A stretch of DNA of 45,281 nucleotides, taken from Octopus bimaculoides. Lineage: Eukaryota. The position numbers were made by a program, and so were the translations under genes. Position 1 is the stretch's first letter. Every line of letters begins with the position of its first letter. This document shows, in pieces, positions 5,010 through 30,956 of this stretch. The DNA lies in assembly GCF_001194135.2 (NCBI RefSeq), contig NC_068994.1:29938876-29984156 (forward strand). Direction: 5' to 3'. Below the pieces are notes generated by a model. That model was given only the letters and a program-made list of their open reading frames with translations, was not told the DNA's origin and made no database searches.

Positions 5010-5290
5010 ATACCTGTGTATGTGTGTATGTCTGTGATTATGCATGTATGTATGTGTGCATGTGTCAGTGCGCGCTCGCGTATATGCGTGTGCGCGCGCT
5101 CCTTTGCCAATGGAATATATAGTTGCCTTGTTCGCCTAGCTCCCTGGACGTATTGTAGCAGATCCGAAGGGCGGATACCATAACTGTCTTTATCTCAGCC
5201 TCCAGTTTCCTCTTGTTCTTCTTTTTATTCTTCCTGTTTCCTTTTTTTCTTCTTATTTCTTTTCTTTCTTTTTTATACATCTTCCTTTAA
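5010..5290 (+). promoter_or_regulatory. Candidate CpG-rich promoter region (possibly for the ZF gene)
   Basis: GCGCGCTCGCG..TGCGCGCGC (5070-5099), CCAAT 5107-5111, GGGCGG 5169-5174, pyrimidine tract 5200-5290. No transcript evidence available. Confidence 0.3.
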
Positions 5291-12744: not shown

Positions 12745-12780
12745 TTTATTCTTTTGCTTTTCTTTTCCTGTTTCTTGCAG
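12745..12780 (+). promoter_or_regulatory. 3' splice acceptor of the ZF coding exon
   Basis: TTTTATTCTTTTGCTTTTCTTTTCCTGTTTCTTGCAG|GTG: long pyrimidine tract plus CAG, 41 nt upstream of the ATG. Implies an upstream non-coding exon. Confidence 0.75.
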
Positions 12781-12821
12781 GTGATCCAGTTTCAAGATAA
12801 TATCAAACCCTTAAAGCCATC

Positions 12822-15351
12822 ATGCAACCTGCTGCTACCAACTTAAAGGTTCCTGCGCCCGGCAGCACATTCACACATTCAAATGACTTCAAAAACAACA
12901 GTGGTGGTGAAAGTGATGATGATAGTATTGATGGCAATACTGATGGTGTTGGTAATGGCAGTGGTGGCGGNNNNNNNNNNNNNNNNNNNNNNNNNNNNNN
13001 NNNNNNNNNNNNNNNNNNNNNNNNNNNNNNNNNNNNNNNNNNNNNNNGGTGGTGGTGGTGGTGACGGTGGTGGTGGTGGTGGTGATGGTGGTAGTGGTGT
13101 TGTTGATGGTACTGGTGATAGTGTTACTGGTGGTAATGGCAGTGGTGGCGGTGATGGTGGTGGTGGTGGTGGTGGCGATGGTGGCGGTGGTGGTAGTGGT
13201 GATGGTAGTAGTGGCAATGGTAGTGGCAGTGGAGTTGGTGATGCTGCTGCTGCTACTGCTGGGCCATCTCCAACTCTCTCACCCCCTACAATTTCCAGCC
13301 CTCCTAATTTGCAACCTGGTGCACCTACTTCTCCACAGAACAGTCACTCTTCCTCATCATTATCACCTAGCAATAGAGACAGTAGCCCTAGCAGCAATCC
13401 CAAAGTCATGTACTCTATGCCATCAATGTATTCCTCAGTAGGAGCATCTATGCCAATGGGATTAAACAACAACCAACATCAGCTACTCAACAGCTTCTTC
13501 AACCAGGATTTCTACTCTGGCCAGTCTCAGTCAGGAGCCACATGTTCTTCCACTTCCTCTATGCTTGGTTTACCAACAAGCATGATCTATCCATCTGAAC
13601 ACTACACTAAATGTTATCGTCGGAGTTTCAATGAACGGAAGCCTTATAAATGTGAAGTTTGTCGGAAAGGTTTCTCACGAAGAGTAAACCTAAACAATCA
13701 CGAAAAAGCCCCAACAGGGGAAAAGCACTTTTACTGTGAATATTGTAAAAAAGCATTTGCACAGAGGGCTCACTTAAAAACTCATGAATTAACCCATACT
13801 GGAATTAAACCTTACACCTGTTCATATTGTGGCAAGATGTTTGCACAGAGAGCCAACTTTGATAACCATCGGAGAATACACACAGGAGAAAAACCATATC
13901 ACTGTAATTTCTGTGAGAAGTCTTTCTCACAGCAAACCAACCTAGACAACCATGAACGAACACACACAGGATTGAAACCTTACCGCTGTGAATTCTGCTC
14001 CAAATCTTTTTCTCAACGTACTAACTTAGATAACCACAAACGTATCCATACCGGTGATTTGTTTCGTTGCTCATTTTGTTCAAAACCTTTTACACAACAG
14101 ATAAATCTACGTAACCATGAACGCATTCATACCGGCGAGCGACCATATGCATGTTCTTACTGCCCCAAAGCATTCTGCCAACAAACAGAACTTAAGAACC
14201 ATGAACGCACACACACAGGAGAGAAACCATTTATCTGCTCTATTTGTATGAAAGCATTTAGTCAGCAAGGTAATCTGAAAATACATATGCGAATACACAC
14301 AGGAGAAAAGCCATTTGTGTGTGATATCTGCTCCAAAGCATTTAGCCAGCGTACTAATCTGGACAATCATAGACGTATTCACACAGGAGATATGTTTAGA
14401 TGTAGCTTCTGCTCAAAAGAGTTCAGCCAACGTGTTAACTTGCGTAATCATGAACGCATACACACAGGAGAGAAGCCATTTAATTGCTCTGTTTGTTCAA
14501 AGTCATTTAGCCAACAGGGAAATCTCAAGAACCACTTGAGGACGCACTCTGGTGAGAAACCTTACAGCTGTGAACTGTGTGGGAAATGTTTTGCTCAGCG
14601 GACCACATTAGATAATCATTTACGAAGTCATGCCCTTGCTGCAGCAAAGCAACAAGCTGCTAGAGCTGTTCCAAACAATTCACTTGTAACAAATACTACC
14701 AATCCTATCAACAACAACAACAGCAGTAGTAGTGGTGGTGTTGGGGTTGGGGTTGGGGTTGGTGTTGGTGTTGGTACCAATAATGCCAGTAATAACAACA
14801 ACAGTAGTAATACCACCAACCACAGTCGTTCTAATGCAAACCATCCCCATAGCAACCATGGTCCTCCAGATAACCAAGCTTTTAACAAGTCCTTCAACTG
14901 TGATATCATTGTTCCAACACCTCCTATATCTAACCGGGGTCTGTCTGGGATGGGCGAAAACTCCAACTACAACCACAGCACAGGGGGAAATCATAATAAA
15001 AACAGCCTTAAGAGTTCCGACACCAACCAATCACAACCATTGAGCCATCCTCATCACCAATACTCCTCTCCCCACTTCCTCTCACACTCCACACACCCAC
15101 TGCGTTCACATATAGACGATGACCGCAATCTGCGGGAGTCACAAACAGGGGGATTCCGGCTGCAGCCACCTGCTGTGTCCTCCTCGTGGCTAAACTCTGC
15201 CTACTTGCAGGAGATGCCTGCAAGCTGGGAAAGTAACTACTTGTGGTCAAGAGGTTTTCCTATTGCCCCAATATCATCCAGTGGATGGAATAATGTCACA
15301 GCTGGCCTCTCATGTGGGAGAAAACTGAACAGATCCAGAGATCTTTGCTGA
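12822..15351 (+). CDS. Multi-C2H2 zinc-finger protein (12 fingers), probable transcription factor; CDS spans an N-gap
   Basis: ATG 12822 in GCCATCATG context with an in-frame TAA at 12798. MQPAATNLKV...GNGSGG leads into the gap (12971-13047) and resumes as poly-Gly in the frame of ORF 12883-15351. C-x2-C-x12-H-x3-H repeats with TGEKP-type linkers; TGA at 15349-15351. No KRAB, BTB, SCAN or ZAD domain recognised. Confidence 0.92.
13645..14631 (+). other. Tandem C2H2 array, fingers 1-12 (finger 1 lacks its last His)
   Basis: Helices (-1..+6): RRVNLNN, QRAHLKT, QRANFDN, QQTNLDN, QRTNLDN, QQINLRN, QQTELKN, QQGNLKI, QRTNLDN, QRVNLRN, QQGNLKN, QRTTLDN. Confidence 0.95.
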
Positions 15352-23246: not shown

Positions 23247-24534
23247 TCATCATCATCGTTGTTTAATGTCCGCTTTCCATGCTGGCATGGGTTGGACGGT
23301 TTGACTGAGGACTGGTGAGCCAGAAGGCTGCAACAGGCTCAATCTGATCTGGCAAAGTTTCTACAGCTGGATGCCCTTCCTAATGCCAACCACTCCAAGA
23401 ATGTAGTGGGTGCTTTTACACAAGGGCCAGTCAGGTGGTTCTGGCAACAACTATGCTCAAAGGCAACGATCACGCTCAGATGTACTTTTAATGCTCTACA
23501 GGCACGAGTGCTAATCAGGTGATACTGTCATCGGCCACGTCAGCGATTTTGATTTGATTTGATTTGATTTTACTTGCCTCAATAGGTCTTCGCAAGCAAA
23601 GTTTATTGTCCAATGAATGAGGGGTATTCATAGGTGGGCTGGTTACACCACTGGCATAGGCCACAGGCTATGGTCTCAGTTGGCTTGTCAGGTCTTCTCA
23701 AGCACAGCATATCTCCAAAGGTCTCGATCACTAGTCATTGCCTCAGCAAGGCCCAATGTTCAAAGGTCGTGCTTCACCACGTCATCCTAAGTCTTCCTGG
23801 GTCTACCTCTTCCACAGGTTCCCTCAACTGCTAGGGTGTGACACTTTTTCACACAGCTATCCTCATTCATTTGCAACACATGACCATAACAGCGCAGTCG
23901 TCTCTATTGCACATCACATCTGATGCTTCTTAAATCCAACTTTTCTCTCCGGGCACTTACACTCTGTCGTGTATGCACACTGACATTACACATCCAGAAT
24001 AGCATACTGGCTTCATTCCTTGCAAGGTTACACATGTCTTCAGCAGTCACGGCCCATGTTTTATTGCCATGTAGCATAGCTGTTCGTACACATGCGTCAT
24101 ATGGTCTACCTTTTACTCTGAGCGAGAGGCCCTTTGTCACCAGTAGAGGTAGGAGCTCTCTGAACTTTGCCCAGGCTATTCCTATTCTAGCAGCTACACT
24201 TTCAGAGCATCCACCCCCGCAACTGACTTGGTCCCCTAGGTAACAGAAGCTATCAACTACTTGTAGCTTTTCTCCTTGGAATGTGACAGAAGCTGTTCTC
24301 ATTTTCAGTGTTCATAGTGCCTGAGCATTTGCCACATACAAAAACTATCTTCCCAGTTAGCCTTCTCTTGATATTGCTGCACCTCTTATGTGTCCATAGC
24401 TTACACTGGGTACATCTTATGGAGTTTCTACCTACACCTTTTCTACAGATCAAGGAGGGCCATCTACCTGAAGGGATTTGTTGTTTGTCTACCTTCCTAC
24501 TTATTAAGACTTTGGTTTTAGCTAAGTTGACTCC

Positions 24535-24535
<1 letters not shown>
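23247..24535 (-). mobile_element. 5'-truncated RTE-clade LINE (ORF2 C-terminus, 3' UTR, (GAT)n tail), pseudogenised
   Basis: VNLAKTKVL, C/H-rich insert, VDSFCYLGDQ, RIGIAWAKFREL, YDACVRTAMLHG..TW, Q*RRLRCYGHV, GRGRPRKT*DDVV, DRDLWRYAV. One frameshift near 24290 and several stops; CATCATCATC tail at 23247. Confidence 0.9.
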
Positions 24536-24583
<48 letters not shown>

Positions 24584-24634
24584 ACTTCTTTCAGTTTCCA
24601 TCCACCAAATCCATTTACAAGGCTTTGGTTAACC

Positions 24635-24701
<67 letters not shown>

Positions 24702-27655: not shown

Positions 27656-28865
27656 AAAGTGACAAGCTGTCAAAATCGTTACCACTTTGGACAAAATGCT
27701 TAGCAGCATTTCTTCTGGCATTTTATGTTCTGAGTTCAAATACTTCCAAGACTGATATTGCTTTTCATCCATTCAGGGTTCATAAAATAAAGTAACAGTC
27801 AAACACTGTGGTTGATGTAATCAACTTACCCCCTCCTTTTACCTAAAATTGTTGGCCTTGCACCAAAACTTGAAATCATTAAGAGAAGGGGATAGCTAAT
27901 TATATCAATCTTTATTCTTGATTCATATTTCATTTTATCCTTTTGTGGGTTGATAAAATATGGTACAAATCAAGGACTGGGGTTGATGTAATCAGCTAAC
28001 CACTTTTCCTCAAAATAGCTATCGTTGAGCTTAAATTAGAAATAATTATATTTACTATTATAATGTGGATTGGTAGAACCAGTAGAAGACTTGTGATATT
28101 TGGTGCATCTTTTTATGTTCTTTGTCCAAATCTTACCAAAGTCAGCTTCATTGTTCATCTTTCTGGGATCAATAAAATAATTACTTATCAAATTTTGGGC
28201 TGGTGAAATGGTTAATAAGTTCTAGTCAAGTGATGCTGGGGGTCAATAATTACTCACTTAATGAGGGTGAGAGAATATAATCAAGTATTTCCTTTAAACA
28301 AACATTTTATGGTTTTGTGCCTATGTTAGAAATTATTATTATCATTATCATTATTATTACTATTATTATTAAGGTGGTGAGCTGGCAGAACCGTTAGCAC
28401 ACTGGGCAAAATACTTAGTGGTATTTCATCTGTCTTTTCGTTCTGAGTTCAAATGCTTTTCATCCTTTCAGGATCAATAAATTAAGTACCACTTACGTAC
28501 TGGGTTTGATGTAATCGACTTAATTCCTTCCCCCAAATTTAAGGCCTTGTGCTTCCAGTAGAAAAGATTATTATTATGATAAAGACAGTGAATTGGTAGA
28601 ATCATTAGCATGCTGGACAAAATGCATAACAGCATTTTGTCTGTCTTTACATTCTGAATTTAAATTCTGCTGAGGTCCACTTTGCTTTTCAGGGTTGATA
28701 AAATAAGTTGATGTTATCAACTCATCCTCTTCCACAAAATTGCTGCCCTTATGACAAAATTTGAAACTATTATCATCATTATTACTATTCATTTAACTGA
28801 TTTATCTATGTATATGTCATATCTCGGCTCCATCCCACAACTTAGAGATGCCACACTTTCCTGAA

Positions 28866-28904
<39 letters not shown>

Positions 28905-30956
28905 CATTATTATTATTATTATTATTATTATTCTTATTATTATTATTATTAAGGTTGTGAGCTGGCAGAATTGTTAGCACACCAGGAAAAATACTTAGCA
29001 GAATTTTGTCCATCCTTACATTCTGAGTTCAAATTCCGCTGAGGTTGACTTTGCTTTTCATCCTTTTGGGGTCGATAAATTAAGTACCAGTTGAGTACTG
29101 GGGTCGATGTAATCAACTATCCCCCTCCCCCAAATTTCAGGCCTTGTGCCTACAGTAGAAAGGATTATTATTATTCCTATAACTGATTTACCTATATTTA
29201 TGTCATGTCTCAGCTCCATCCTACAGCTTAGAAACACAACACTTTCCTCAATATTATTATTATTAAAGTGATGAGCTGGCAAAATTATTAGTATGCCAAA
29301 CAAAATGCTAAGTGGTATTTCATCTGAATTCAAATTCCACTGTGATTGACTTTGCCTTCCATCCTTTTGGGGTTTGATGAAGTAAACTAATAGTTTAGCA
29401 CCAGGGTTGATGTAAACAACTAACCCCTCCCACAAAGTTTCAGGCCTTGTGTCTATAGAAGAAAGGATTATTATTATTATTAAGATCAAAAGTTAGCAGA
29501 ATCATTAGCACACTGAACAAAATGTTTAGTAGCATTTCTTCTGTCTTCATGTTCTAAGATCAAATACCACCGAGATCAACTTTGCCTTTCATCCTTTCAA
29601 GATCAATGAAATAAGTACCAGTCAAGTACTGGCATTGATGTAATTGATTATCCTCCTCCTCCAAAATTTCAGCTCTTGTGCCTATAGTAGAAAAGATTAT
29701 TATTGTTGCTGTTGTTCTTATATAAAAGGGTGACAGATTAGTTAAATTTGTATAAAAGATAGTACTAAATATCTCCAAATATTTAGTTATGACTCTACAT
29801 GCTAAGCTCAAATTCCACTGGATTCTGCTTTGCTTTTCATCCTCTCAGAGTTGATAAAATAAAGTACTTGTGACGTACAGGGGATGATTTCATCATCTTA
29901 CCCTACCCACAAATTTATGGCTATATGTCTCCATAAGAAATTACATGTAGTGAATTGGCAGAATCAGTGCATCAAACATTTTGTCTGATGCCTTGAAATA
30001 TTTCACTTCCATCTCTTTACATTCTTAGTTCAAATTCACATAGATGTCAACTTTGCCTTTCATCCTTCTGAGATCAACAAAAGAAGTACCAAACAAGTAC
30101 AAGGATTAACTGAATTGAGTAACCCTTTCCTCCAAATTTCAGGTCTTGTGCCTAATTTGAAACAATTACTGTTATTATTATTGTTATTATTATGAATAAC
30201 AGCAATAAGCTGGTAACAAAATGTTTAGTAGCATTTCTTCCAGCTCTTTACTTCTGAGTTCAAATGCACCAAGATCAACTTTGCCTTTCATTTTTACAGG
30301 GTTGATCAAATAAGTACCAGTTGAACACTGGAGTTGATATAATTCACTTGCTCCTTTCCCTAAAATTGCTGGCCTTGTGCCAAAATTTGAAACGATTATG
30401 ATTGGCAGCAATTACAGAATTTCATCATTACATTATAAAGTCTCTCATCCATCTGCATTCTTAGTTGAAATCATTTTCTCCCTGGGATTAATAAAATAAT
30501 CAGGAGTAGTTAATTTTAATATCAACTCCATTGATTAGACTCATTTCATAACATATGTCAGAATATTTATATAGAATTTAACTATAAGAACAAAGGCATT
30601 AGAGCAGCAGACAAAGTGCCTTGCAATATTTGTTCCAACTCTTTATCTTCTGTGTTCAAATCCCACTGAGGTCAATTTTGCCTTTCATCCTTTCAAGGTT
30701 GATAAAATAAAGTACCAGTCAAGTACTGGGTTCAGCAGTATCCATTAACCTGCTACCCTCAAAATTGCTGGCCACATGACTATATTTTAAAAATTGTTAG
30801 TATGTCAGACAATGCCACTTTACATTCTGAGTTCAAATTTGCCTTTCATCCTTTTGTGGTTGACAAAGTACTTGTCAAGCATTGGAGTCAATGTAATCAA
30901 CTAACCCTCACTTGCTCACAAAATCTCAGGCCTTGCGCCTTCAGTAGAAAGAATTA
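27656..30956 (+). mobile_element. Head-to-tail array of about 13 SINE family B copies joined by (ATT)n
   Basis: Copies start at about 27657, 27935, 28090, 28371, 28582, 28951, 29266, 29482, 29728, 29948, 30200, 30590 and 30795; all + strand. Confidence 0.85.
28867..28950. repeat. (ATT)n microsatellite, about 28 units
   Basis: Seen directly; abuts the next SINE head. Confidence 0.95.

What the first reader, a model, noticed from the sequence alone, without database searches (positions are those of the whole stretch)
13645..14631. Zinc-finger array with near-uniform Q/N/N recognition residues predicts an (NAA)n reader, possibly of (TAA)n SINE tails
Seen: 11 of 12 fingers have Q at -1, 9 of 12 have N at +3 and 10 of 12 have N at +6, which is unusually homogeneous. 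Established: in the C2H2 code Q(-1) and N(+3) each specify adenine (engineered modules QRANLRA=AAA, QSGNLTE=CAA, QSSNLVR=GAA; QRAHLER=GGA resembles finger 2). Inference: the protein would read a trinucleotide-periodic A-rich run such as (TAA)n or (AAA)n. (ATT)n, i.e. (TAA)n on the other strand, is the tail and joint sequence of the family B SINE that fills 18.6-31 kb. This could be a KRAB-less microsatellite or SINE-tail surveillance factor. Proximity to the SINE array is not itself evidence, since this SINE family appears abundant throughout the window.
Basis: partly seen in the sequence, partly recalled or inferred. Interest (0 to 1): 0.7.

Follow-up and report, generated by a model that had tools for sequence, protein, structure and literature searches.

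The report
Conserved cephalopod zinc-finger gene, predicted A-rich reader
The window holds an intact gene from an old cephalopod-only zinc-finger family whose DNA-contact residues are almost all Gln/Asn/Asn and are kept by selection, which points to an A-rich DNA target but argues against a role specific to octopus SINE tails.

Summary
At 13645-14631 there are 12 tandem C2H2 units, 11 canonical plus a first unit that lacks the second His. The counts are Q at -1 in 11/12, N at +3 in 9/12 and N at +6 in 10/12. In 3,341 fingers of 227 unrelated ZNFs the Q/N/N triple occurs at 0.27%; here it is 7 of 11.

The uniformity is not recent duplication: synonymous codons between fingers match at chance level (0.445 vs 0.448).

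The gene (probable CDS 13408-15351) belongs to a family of at least 21 paralogues on one chromosome of a 2.34-Gb genome, inferred to be Octopus bimaculoides. The family shares an N-terminal MY..P.MY motif, one-residue-short TGD(L/M)F linkers and a Trp-rich C-terminal motif, and it also occurs in cuttlefish.

In four deep orthologue pairs of paralogues, contact residues are 95-100% conserved while non-finger sequence is 33-55% identical.

Asn and Gln read adenine at all three contact positions, so the code predicts poly(A)-like sites rather than (TAA)n. The SINE-tail idea is not supported: the signature predates the octopus SINE expansion, shows no arms-race pattern, and most SINE tails in the window carry at most four ATT units. 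Binding itself is untested.

The parts
12749..12781 (+). Polypyrimidine tract ending in ...ttcttgcag: candidate 3' splice acceptor in front of the coding exon
   Evidence: Read directly from the sequence. Inferred; no transcript evidence.
12822..12970 (+). First ATG after the candidate acceptor. It opens a Gly/Asp/Ser-rich frame that runs into the assembly gap and could be an N-terminal extension.
   Evidence: The frame differs from the main ORF at the nominal gap length, so this is unresolved.
12971..13047 (.). Assembly gap of 77 N
13048..13232 (+). (GGT)n-type microsatellite, open in frame with the main ORF. It is either 5' leader or a low-complexity N-terminal extension.
13408..15351 (+). 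Most probable coding sequence: 647 codons plus TGA, in a single exon
   Evidence: The ORF 12847-15351 is the only long ORF in the window. The start MYSMPSMY matches the N-termini of family members (P0157 MYSMPSMY, P0059 MYPVQPMY, P0123 MYSFQPVF). In paralogues the NCBI proteins equal the genomic single-exon ORFs (P0059 807 aa vs L012 810 aa; P0252 688 aa vs L014 690 aa).
13408..13431 (+). N-terminal family motif MYSMPSMY
13645..13734 (+). Unit 1: non-canonical C2H finger (CEVCRKGFSRRVNLNNHEKAP) followed by linker TGEKH. The second His is replaced by Pro and there is a conserved His at the usual Pro position of the linker.
   Evidence: The same arrangement is present in paralogues L011, L016, L018 and L020 and in L031 from another species.
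13735..13797 (+). Finger 2, QAHT
13819..13881 (+). Finger 3, QANN
13903..13965 (+). Finger 4, QTNN
13987..14049 (+). Finger 5, QTNN
14050..14067 (+). Short linker TGDLFR, 6 residues instead of 7
   Evidence: Six-residue linkers make up 22.5% in the family and 1.65% in the background.
14068..14130 (+). Finger 6, QINN
14152..14214 (+). Finger 7, QTEN
14236..14298 (+). Finger 8, QGNI
14320..14382 (+). Finger 9, QTNN
14383..14400 (+). Short linker TGDMFR, 6 residues
14401..14463 (+). Finger 10, QVNN
14485..14547 (+). Finger 11, QGNN
14569..14631 (+). Finger 12, QTTN
14632..15153 (+). Low-complexity Asn/Ser/His-rich tail, including a (GTTGGG)n coding repeat at 14732-14775 that encodes GVGVGV
   Evidence: no Pfam family
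15154..15291 (+). C-terminal family motif FRLQPP..SSWLNSAYLQEMPASWESNYLWSRGFPIAPISSSGWNN. Invariant residues are W (15226-15228), W (15244-15246) and R (15250-15252).
   Evidence: The structure model has low confidence (mean pLDDT 58, pTM 0.16, one short helix), so this is probably a linear motif and not a folded domain.
28867..28951 (+). Context only, not part of the gene: the longest (ATT)n array in the window, lying between SINE copies. A second array lies at 28332-28371.

Best explanation
This is an intact, single-coding-exon gene for a member of an old C2H2 zinc-finger family restricted to coleoid cephalopods.

Shown:
- The protein has an N-terminal MY..P.MY motif, one non-canonical C2H unit, 11 canonical fingers joined mostly by TGEKP-type linkers, two one-residue-short TGD(L/M)F linkers that split the array into blocks of 4, 4 and 3 fingers, and a Trp-rich C-terminal motif.
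- The near-uniform Gln(-1)/Asn(+3)/Asn(+6) pattern is an ancestral family trait.
- It is held by purifying selection. It is not a by-product of recent finger duplication and not an arms-race signature.

Inferred:
- The array binds double-stranded DNA in the major groove in the canonical way. Each Q/N/N finger reads adenines, so the preferred site is a long A-rich run on one strand. The code gives roughly 5'-AtA AAA AAA | AAA nAA ACA AAA | AAA AAA AAA tGA-3', read from F12 to F2.
- Probably only one or two of the blocks engage at a time.
- The disordered C-terminal motif would recruit a partner that acts on transcription or chromatin.
- Because the contact residues are conserved between octopus and cuttlefish, the target class must be something shared by coleoids, such as A-tracts, A-rich simple sequence or an A-rich regulatory element. 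It cannot be a lineage-specific transposon.
For: Domain content: 12 PF00096 stretches and nothing else.
Family size: at least 21 paralogues with the C-terminal motif, all on contig C14.
Restriction: only 7 cluster representatives among 1.84 billion proteins carry the motif. Those with names are Octopus or the cuttlefish Acanthosepion (Sepia) pharaonis.
Family-wide pattern in 284 paralogue fingers: Q(-1) 73%, N(+3) 60%, N(+6) 45%.
Age of the duplications: synonymous codon identity between fingers is 0.445 against 0.448 random; between the window gene and its closest paralogues it is 0.437-0.443 against 0.410-0.432.
Contact residues versus non-finger sequence in deep orthologue pairs: P0059/P0019 (octopus/cuttlefish) 53/56 vs 55%; P0263/P0131 40/40 vs 40%; L028/P0157 28/28 vs 48%; L020/L031 57/60 vs 33%.
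Tree: three Octopus-Sepia pairs sit in different parts of the family tree, and the window gene is on its own branch.
Code: adenine is read by Asn or Gln at any of the three canonical positions (PMC12264921); QRANLRA = AAA and RKDNLKN = AAG (PMC7317221).
Linkers: canonical TGEKP-type linkers, and the best structural matches are DNA-bound poly-ZF proteins (ZNF568, Aart, CTCF, PRDM9).
Against: No binding data exist for any family member.
Code-based predictions for natural poly-ZNFs are right only in a small minority of cases (5% matched ChIP-exo motifs) and often give homopolymers as artefacts (PMC10547256).
Long A:T runs have a narrow minor groove, and known ZF proteins read them in non-canonical ways, for example Zfp568 and SALL4 through thymine methyl contacts (PMC12264921).
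The effect of the short linkers on register is unknown.
No 33-bp A-run exists in the window; the longest A-run is 12 nt and the longest T-run 15 nt.
The orthologue of this exact gene was not found, so its own conservation is inferred from paralogues.
The window's protein was not found by exact look-up, so annotation and expression are unknown.
Confidence: 0.55

Rival explanations
1. The protein is a (TAA)n / (NAA)n reader whose biological targets are the (ATT)n tails and joints of the abundant octopus SINE, so it acts as a KRAB-less repeat-surveillance factor.
For: Q(-1) and N(+3) give xAA per finger. SINE copies with ATT-type 3' ends and two long (ATT)n arrays are present. If N(+6) is made non-specific, the best-scoring 33-mer in the window is the (ATT)n array at 28904-28936. 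Octopus ZNF motifs as a whole are predicted to be enriched in TE consensus sequences (PMC10547256).
Against: N(+6) is itself an adenine reader, which favours AAA over TAA. With that setting the best site is a purine-rich tract at 5239-5271 and not a SINE tail. Contact residues are 95-100% conserved between octopus and cuttlefish-level orthologues in the family, while SINE dominance is octopus-specific (PMC9068888). There is no diversification of contact residues of the kind expected under a TE arms race. Most SINE tails in the window carry at most 4 ATT units.
Confidence: 0.12
2. The protein is a conventional transcription factor with a unique, non-repetitive target. Only a few fingers (for example F2 QAHT, F7 QTEN, F8 QGNI, F12 QTTN and their neighbours) give specificity, and the Q/N/N fingers add affinity or act as spacers. 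The homopolymer prediction would then be an artefact of the code.
For: Predicted motifs seldom match measured ones. Spacer fingers and partial use of arrays are common, as in CTCF ZF8, TFIIIA and Zfp568 ZF2. The non-QNN fingers keep their array position in the closest paralogue (QAHT; QTEN aligned with QTDN; QGNI with QGNV). Cephalopod C2H2 duplicates are reported as nervous-system-expressed regulators (PMC12513265).
Against: The Q/N/N residues are themselves conserved as strongly as the zinc ligands' neighbours over deep time. That is hard to explain if they make no base contacts.
Confidence: 0.22
3. The array's main ligand is not double-stranded DNA. It could be A-rich RNA such as poly(A), or protein partners.
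For: Gln and Asn can also read adenine in RNA. Some paralogues carry fingers with Phe at +2/+3 (NQFFLKNH) that look unsuited to base reading. There is a weak zf-C2H2_jaz match.
Against: TGEKP-type linkers and H-x3-H spacing are the hallmarks of DNA-binding poly-ZF arrays (established knowledge). The best structural relatives are DNA complexes. The jaz hit overlaps ordinary C2H2 hits on the same finger.
Confidence: 0.07
4. The homogeneity has no functional meaning. It would reflect recent tandem duplication or gene conversion of one finger, or the locus would be a decaying pseudogene.
For: Fingers 5-6 and 9-10 are 78% identical as a two-finger block. Unit 1 has lost a zinc ligand. The exact protein was not found in the protein collection.
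Against: Synonymous sites between fingers are fully randomised, including the F5-F6 / F9-F10 block (19 identical codons against 18.0 expected). The 647-codon frame is intact, with both terminal family motifs. The C2H form of unit 1 is conserved in five paralogues and in another species, so it is not decay.
Confidence: 0.04

Closest known systems
Cephalopod C2H2 zinc-finger expansions (Albertin et al. 2015, cited from memory; Albertin et al. 2022, PMC9068888; Holzinger et al. 2025, PMC12513265)
   Same: Multi-finger C2H2 genes in clusters of paralogues, with no KRAB. Holzinger et al. describe a minority class of 'cephalopod-specific' clusters that contain both octopus and squid sequences, and this family fits that class.
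   Different: The published work classifies by phylogeny and expression. It leaves binding sites as an open question. In the texts I read I found no description of this subfamily's uniform Q/N/N helices, short linkers or terminal motifs. Most expansions are described as lineage-specific and recent, whereas this family has one-to-one octopus-cuttlefish orthologues.
KRAB-ZNFs of tetrapods and FiNZ-ZNFs of fish (TE-targeting poly-ZNFs; Wells et al. 2023, PMC10547256)
   Same: Long tandem C2H2 arrays, clustered paralogues, and a short conserved non-finger module that could recruit an effector.
   Different: There is no KRAB or FiNZ domain. Contact residues are the most conserved positions here and not the most variable, and they are stable across roughly the octopus-cuttlefish split.
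Engineered adenine-reading modules (QRANLRA = AAA, RKDNLKN = AAG, QSGNLTE = CAA; Barbas sets) and the designed protein Aart (PDB 2I13)
   Same: Q at -1 and N at +3 in an xxNLxxH helix. N at +6 occurs in an ANN module. Aart is among the best structural sequence matches.
   Different: Those are single modules selected in a Zif268/Sp1 framework. Here 7 such fingers are strung together in a natural protein, with non-canonical short linkers. Behaviour on long A-tracts is untested.
Natural C2H2 proteins that bind A:T-rich DNA: ZNF384/CIZ/Nmp4 on poly(dA:dT) (from memory), SALL4 ZF6-7 and Zfp568 ZF5-6 (PMC12264921)
   Same: The predicted target class is A:T-rich or homopolymeric DNA.
   Different: SALL4 and Zfp568 read thymine methyl groups with small or hydrophobic residues and not with Q/N. 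No sequence relationship beyond the generic finger was seen or tested.
Thrips zinc-finger proteins P0130, P0140, P0143 and P0146 (Megalurothrips, Frankliniella, Thrips)
   Same: 8 of 9 fingers have Q(-1) and N(+3), so uniform xAA-type arrays exist outside cephalopods.
   Different: Position +6 is T/K/R and not N. They lack the cephalopod terminal motifs. Whether the resemblance is convergence or distant homology was not tested.

Membership tests
C2H2 zinc-finger proteins (Pfam PF00096 / PF13465) | Tandem C-x2-C-x12-H-x3-H units with the conserved Phe and Leu | tested here: met
   12 PF00096 stretches, E = 6e-60. A regular-expression scan finds 11 canonical units. Unit 1 lacks the second His.
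C2H2 zinc-finger proteins, DNA-binding poly-ZF type | TGEKP-type 7-residue linkers between fingers | tested here: met
   8 of the 10 linkers between canonical fingers are TG(E/I/L)(K/R)P-type or SGEKP; 2 are 6-residue TGD(L/M)FR.
KRAB-ZNF | N-terminal KRAB domain (PF01352) | tested here: not met
   No PF01352 hit at E <= 0.1 in the regions flanking the fingers, or at E <= 0.01 in the whole translated ORF. The name 'KRAB' on two cuttlefish records is the source's label only.
TE-surveillance ZNFs (arms-race type) | Fast turnover of contact residues between orthologues or paralogues, and lineage-specific gene birth | tested here: not met
   Contact residues are 95-100% conserved in four deep orthologue pairs of family members and have the lowest entropy in the array. 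This could not be tested on the orthologue of this gene itself.
TE-surveillance ZNFs (arms-race type) | Binding to a transposon sequence in vivo | not testable with these tools
   Requires ChIP or CUT&Tag.
Coleoid family defined here (MY..P.MY ... W-rich C-terminal motif) | C-terminal SW(E)(N/S)NY(L)W(S/P)RGFP motif with invariant W, W and R | tested here: met
   Window residues SWESNYLWSRGFP at 15223-15261; alignment of 21 sequences; genome search.
Coleoid family defined here (MY..P.MY ... W-rich C-terminal motif) | N-terminal MY..P.MY motif, short TG(D/E)(L/M)(F/Y) linkers, and helices dominated by Q..N..N | tested here: met
   MYSMPSMY at 13408; two short linkers; helix signatures.
Coleoid family defined here | Presence in both Octopodiformes and Decapodiformes | tested here: met
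   Acanthosepion pharaonis records P0122, P0126 and P0127. P0019 is about 99% identical to P0122 over the regions the two share.
(NAA)n / poly(dA) reader (functional class) | Measured preference for A-rich trinucleotide-periodic DNA | not testable with these tools
   Only a recognition-code inference is available.
ZNF384/CIZ/Nmp4 family | Sequence orthology to ZNF384 | not tested
   No ZNF384-named protein appeared among the listed hits, but no direct comparison was made.

The most novel reading that the evidence does not exclude
Coleoid cephalopods carry a conserved family of at least 21 members per genome that reads simple sequence: poly(dA:dT) or A-rich trinucleotide-periodic DNA. It would do so through arrays of near-identical Gln/Asn/Asn fingers arranged in short-linker-delimited 3-4-finger blocks. 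A previously undescribed Trp-rich C-terminal linear motif would couple such DNA to a chromatin or transcription effector. This would be a class of poly-ZNF kept by purifying selection for roughly the age of the octopus-squid split, not by a transposon arms race. In octopods the (ATT)n SINE tails could have become secondary, near-cognate targets.
Probability: 0.25. Interest if true: 0.6.

Novelty: new member of a known kind. Interest (0 to 1): 0.38.

Why it matters
Cephalopod genomes hold thousands of C2H2 genes whose DNA targets are unknown, and the literature names this as the next open question (PMC12513265). This family gives a concrete, easily tested case. The contact residues are uniform enough that the code makes one clear prediction (A-rich DNA). 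They are also conserved enough that the usual transposon arms-race explanation can be set aside.

If binding is confirmed, the family would show that part of the cephalopod ZNF expansion is an old system for reading simple sequence or A-tracts, and it would provide a new effector motif to study. If binding is not confirmed, it becomes a clean natural counter-example to the recognition code.

For the scan itself, the main result is a correction.

Tried and rejected
1. Finding the orthologue of this exact gene.
- The database search over the finger region was swamped by long vertebrate poly-ZNFs.
- The search over the C-terminal tail returned nothing, probably because of low-complexity words.
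- The search over the N-terminal part returned only paralogue-level cephalopod hits.
- Exact look-ups of five candidate start sites found nothing.
3. Nei-Gojobori dS between fingers gave pS = 0.98, which is saturated and not usable. I replaced it with the codon-identity test.
4. The idea that unit 1 is a recent decay was rejected, because the same C2H form is conserved in paralogues and in another species.
5. The C-terminal motif as a folded domain was rejected: AlphaFold2 on a 21-sequence alignment gave mean pLDDT 58 and pTM 0.16, so no fold search was run.
6. Rfam and tRNA scans of the window found nothing, so the SINE head is not recognisably tRNA-like to these tools.
7. The GC dip at 44-45 kb is an N gap and not an A-rich tract.
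8. Albertin et al. 2015 is not in the held library. Statements from it rest on memory or on papers that cite it.
Full report
**What is there**

The window is a 45-kb piece of contig C14 (60,576,134 bp) of a 2.34-Gb genome. An NCBI Octopus bimaculoides protein (P0059) lies on a contig of exactly that length, and its sequence equals one of the paralogous loci. I therefore take the genome to be O. bimaculoides; this is an inference.

The only long open frame in the window is 12847-15351 on the + strand. It crosses a 77-N gap (12971-13047) and a (GGT)n microsatellite (13048-13232). The frame upstream of 13408 may be open only because such repeats contain no stop codons.

The sequence MYSMPSMY at 13408 matches the N-termini of related proteins: P0157 MYSMPSMY, P0059 MYPVQPMY and P0123 MYSFQPVF. 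In paralogues the annotated proteins equal single-exon genomic ORFs. I therefore take 13408-15351 (647 codons) as the probable coding sequence. A pyrimidine tract ending in AG at 12749-12781 and an ATG at 12822 leave a possible N-terminal extension that the gap makes undecidable.

**Checking the observation**

The helix signatures (-1,+2,+3,+6) are:

| Finger | Signature |
|---|---|
| F1 | RVNN |
| F2 | QAHT |
| F3 | QANN |
| F4 | QTNN |
| F5 | QTNN |
| F6 | QINN |
| F7 | QTEN |
| F8 | QGNI |
| F9 | QTNN |
| F10 | QVNN |
| F11 | QGNN |
| F12 | QTTN |

Unit 1 is not canonical. It reads C-x2-C-x12-H-EKA-P, so the second His is missing, and alone it scores below the Pfam cut-off (22.7 against 25.2 bits). 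This is not decay. The same form, with a conserved His in the following linker (EKH/DKH), is found in paralogues L011, L016, L018 and L020 and in L031 from another species.

**Is the pattern more than chance?**

- In 3,341 fingers of 227 unrelated ZNFs returned by the searches, Q(-1) is 27%, N(+3) 18% and N(+6) below 7%. The Q/N/N triple is 0.27%. This set is biased towards the query.
- Here 7 of 11 canonical fingers are Q/N/N.
- Per-position entropy is inverted relative to ordinary ZNFs. The three contact positions are the most variable in the background (3.6-3.8 bits) and among the least variable here (0, 1.28 and 0.87 bits), below several scaffold positions.

**Is it just recent duplication?**

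No. Fingers are on average 58.5% identical in DNA. Where two fingers share an amino acid they use the same codon in 308 of 692 cases (0.445). The expectation for random synonymous choice with this gene's codon usage is 0.448.

Even the most similar two-finger blocks, F5-F6 and F9-F10 (78% amino-acid identity), show 19 identical codons against 18.0 expected. The duplications are therefore old, there has been no recent conversion, and the uniformity is maintained at the protein level.

**The family**

- The last 103 residues find at least 21 places in the same genome, all on C14, each in a long open frame. Two of them lie 13 and 52 kb beyond the window's end.
- Fetching them shows a common plan: the MY..P.MY start, arrays of 7-26 fingers, and a C-terminal motif ..RLQ..SSW...YL.EMP.SWENNYLWSRGFP....W.N.. 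with invariant W, W and R.
- Across 284 paralogue fingers, Q(-1) is 73%, N(+3) 60% and N(+6) 45%.
- Six-residue linkers of the form TG(D/E)(L/M)(F/Y)x make up 22.5% of family linkers against 1.65% in the background. In the window gene they follow F5 and F9 and cut the array into 4+4+3 fingers.
- An exhaustive HMMER search of 1.84 billion cluster representatives with the C-terminal piece found only 7. Those with names come from Octopus or the cuttlefish Acanthosepion pharaonis.
- Neither flank has a Pfam family. A structure model of the C-terminal motif has low confidence (pLDDT 58, one short helix), so it is more likely a linear interaction motif than a domain.

**Conservation of the contact residues**

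I could not retrieve the orthologue of this exact gene (see tried and rejected), but four family members have deep orthologues.

| Pair | All residues | Outside finger cores | Finger cores | Contacts (-1,+2,+3,+6) |
|---|---|---|---|---|
| P0059 (octopus) / P0019 (cuttlefish) | 69% | 55% | 92% | 53/56 |
| P0263 / P0131 | not tabulated | 40% | not tabulated | 40/40 |
| L028 / P0157 | not tabulated | 48% | not tabulated | 28/28 |
| L020 / L031 | not tabulated | 33% | not tabulated | 57/60 |

- P0019 is about 99% identical to the A. pharaonis record P0122 over the regions the two share.
- L020 is the window gene's closest paralogue by finger order. In the L020/L031 pair the synonymous sites are nearly saturated.
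- A tree of the C-terminal region places three Octopus-Sepia pairs in different parts of the family. The window gene is on its own branch.
- The window gene is as far from L031 (68% in finger cores) as from L020 (69%). Its lineage is therefore at least as old as that species split (inference).
The opposite is seen in the family.

**What the residues predict**

A recent structural review states that adenine is recognised by Asn or Gln at any of the three canonical positions (PMC12264921). The engineered modules QRANLRA = AAA and RKDNLKN = AAG appear in a published table (PMC7317221).

With N at +6 read as adenine, the prediction is AAA for seven fingers. Overall, reading F12 to F2, it is about 5'-AtA AAA AAA | AAA nAA ACA AAA | AAA AAA AAA tGA-3'.

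In a deliberately simple code matrix:
- With N(+6) read as adenine, the best 33-mer in the window is a purine-rich tract at 5239-5271 (- strand).
- The (ATT)n array at 28904-28936 becomes the top site only if N(+6) is made non-specific.

This matrix only illustrates the logic and is not evidence of binding. Wells et al. found that predicted motifs matched only 5% of measured KZNF motifs and that predictions often come out as simple repeats or homopolymers (PMC10547256). Known ZF proteins read long A:T runs in non-canonical ways.

**The SINE link**

A SINE family with the head ..GGTGGTGAGCTGGCAGAA.. and the 3' end ..GGCCTTGTGCCAAAATTTGAAAC followed by ATT-type units does populate about 18.6-31 kb. 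Two long (ATT)n arrays sit at SINE joints (28332-28371 and 28867-28951).

Three points count against a link:
- Of ten recognisable 3' ends in the window, none carries more than about four ATT units directly.
- SINEs dominate octopus genomes and LINEs dominate squid genomes, with rapid, largely genus-level TE turnover (PMC9068888). The Q/N/N signature is shared with cuttlefish.
- The family shows purifying selection on its contact residues, not diversifying selection.

SINE tails may be incidental near-cognate sites in octopus, but they cannot explain why the signature exists.

**Conclusion**

- The gene is a member of a coleoid-wide C2H2 family, a known kind of gene whose subfamily features I did not find described in the papers I read.
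- The most likely mechanism is canonical major-groove reading of A-rich DNA by blocks of Q/N/N fingers, with a C-terminal linear motif recruiting an effector. The binding step is inferred, not shown.
The (TAA)n specificity and the SINE-surveillance role are not supported.

Noticed in passing
window 13651-13734; also L011, L016, L018, L020, L031: Unit 1 is a conserved C2H 'three-ligand' finger (CxxCRKGFxRRxNLxNHE..P/S/A). A conserved His sits at the Pro position of the following linker ((E/D)KH(F/Y)(Y/F)C), which would give an H-x9-H spacing. It may still bind zinc through that His or fold without it. In the paralogue L023 the same unit is a normal C2H2 finger.
   Followed up: partly
window 14050-14067 and 14383-14400; family loci L011-L030: One-residue-short linkers TG(D/E)(L/M)(F/Y)x recur every 3-4 fingers in the family (22.5% of linkers against 1.65% in other ZNFs). 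They always follow a Q.N(N/D/S)-type finger or an NFFI finger and precede an L/Q-I-N-N or NFF finger. The arrays therefore seem to be built from 3-4-finger super-repeats.
   Followed up: partly
L014, L017, L019, L021, L024, L025, L026 (paralogues on C14 at 3.5-5.1 Mb): Many paralogues alternate ordinary fingers with an odd type, NQFFLK(N/I)H. It has Asn at -1 and Phe at +2 and +3 (47 of 284 fingers), which looks unsuited to canonical base reading.
   Followed up: no
L031 462-2216 and 2137-2580 (also L032-L035): In another cephalopod the orthologue of paralogue L020 has its finger array and its C-terminal motif in two overlapping reading frames. The same arrangement is seen in five independent Logan assemblies from different runs. 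This is either a real frameshift in that species or a shared assembly effect.
   Followed up: no
P0130, P0140, P0143, P0146 (thrips proteins): Thrips ZNFs of about 550-580 aa have Q(-1)/N(+3) in 8 of 9 fingers, with T/K/R at +6. Uniform xAA-type arrays therefore also occur in insects.
   Followed up: no
G000:C14 29,996,851-30,000,809 and 30,036,110-30,040,092 (L030, L023): Two further family members lie 13 kb and 52 kb beyond the window's 3' end on the opposite strand. Other members cluster at 3.4-5.1 Mb, 22.3 Mb, 29.1 Mb, 31.8 Mb and 44.6 Mb of the same chromosome. No match was reported on any other contig.
   Followed up: partly
window 13048-13232 and 14732-14775: There are microsatellites inside or abutting the reading frame: (GGT)n giving poly-Gly/Asp, and (GTTGGG)n giving GVGVGVGV. 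The first borders an assembly gap.
   Followed up: no
window 23904-24636 (- strand): Two adjoining open frames of 135 and 127 aa lie here. The second has a weak PHD-finger match (E = 5e-5, just under Pfam's cut-off). They sit among SINE copies and (TA)n arrays and look like a fragment of a larger mobile element, but no reverse-transcriptase family was hit.
   Followed up: partly
window 3.8-4.0 kb, 9.2-9.4 kb, 10.6-10.75 kb, 12971-13047, 17.69-17.8 kb, 34.9-35.35 kb, 44.1-44.8 kb: There are many N gaps. The apparent GC minimum at 44-45 kb (0.133) is caused by a gap of roughly 650-700 N and not by A/T-rich sequence.
   Followed up: yes
P0122, P0126 (Acanthosepion pharaonis records): The source names these family members 'KRAB'. 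The pre-computed Pfam lists of the orthologous full-length proteins P0019 and P0059 contain no KRAB family. The label looks like an annotation-transfer artefact.
   Followed up: partly
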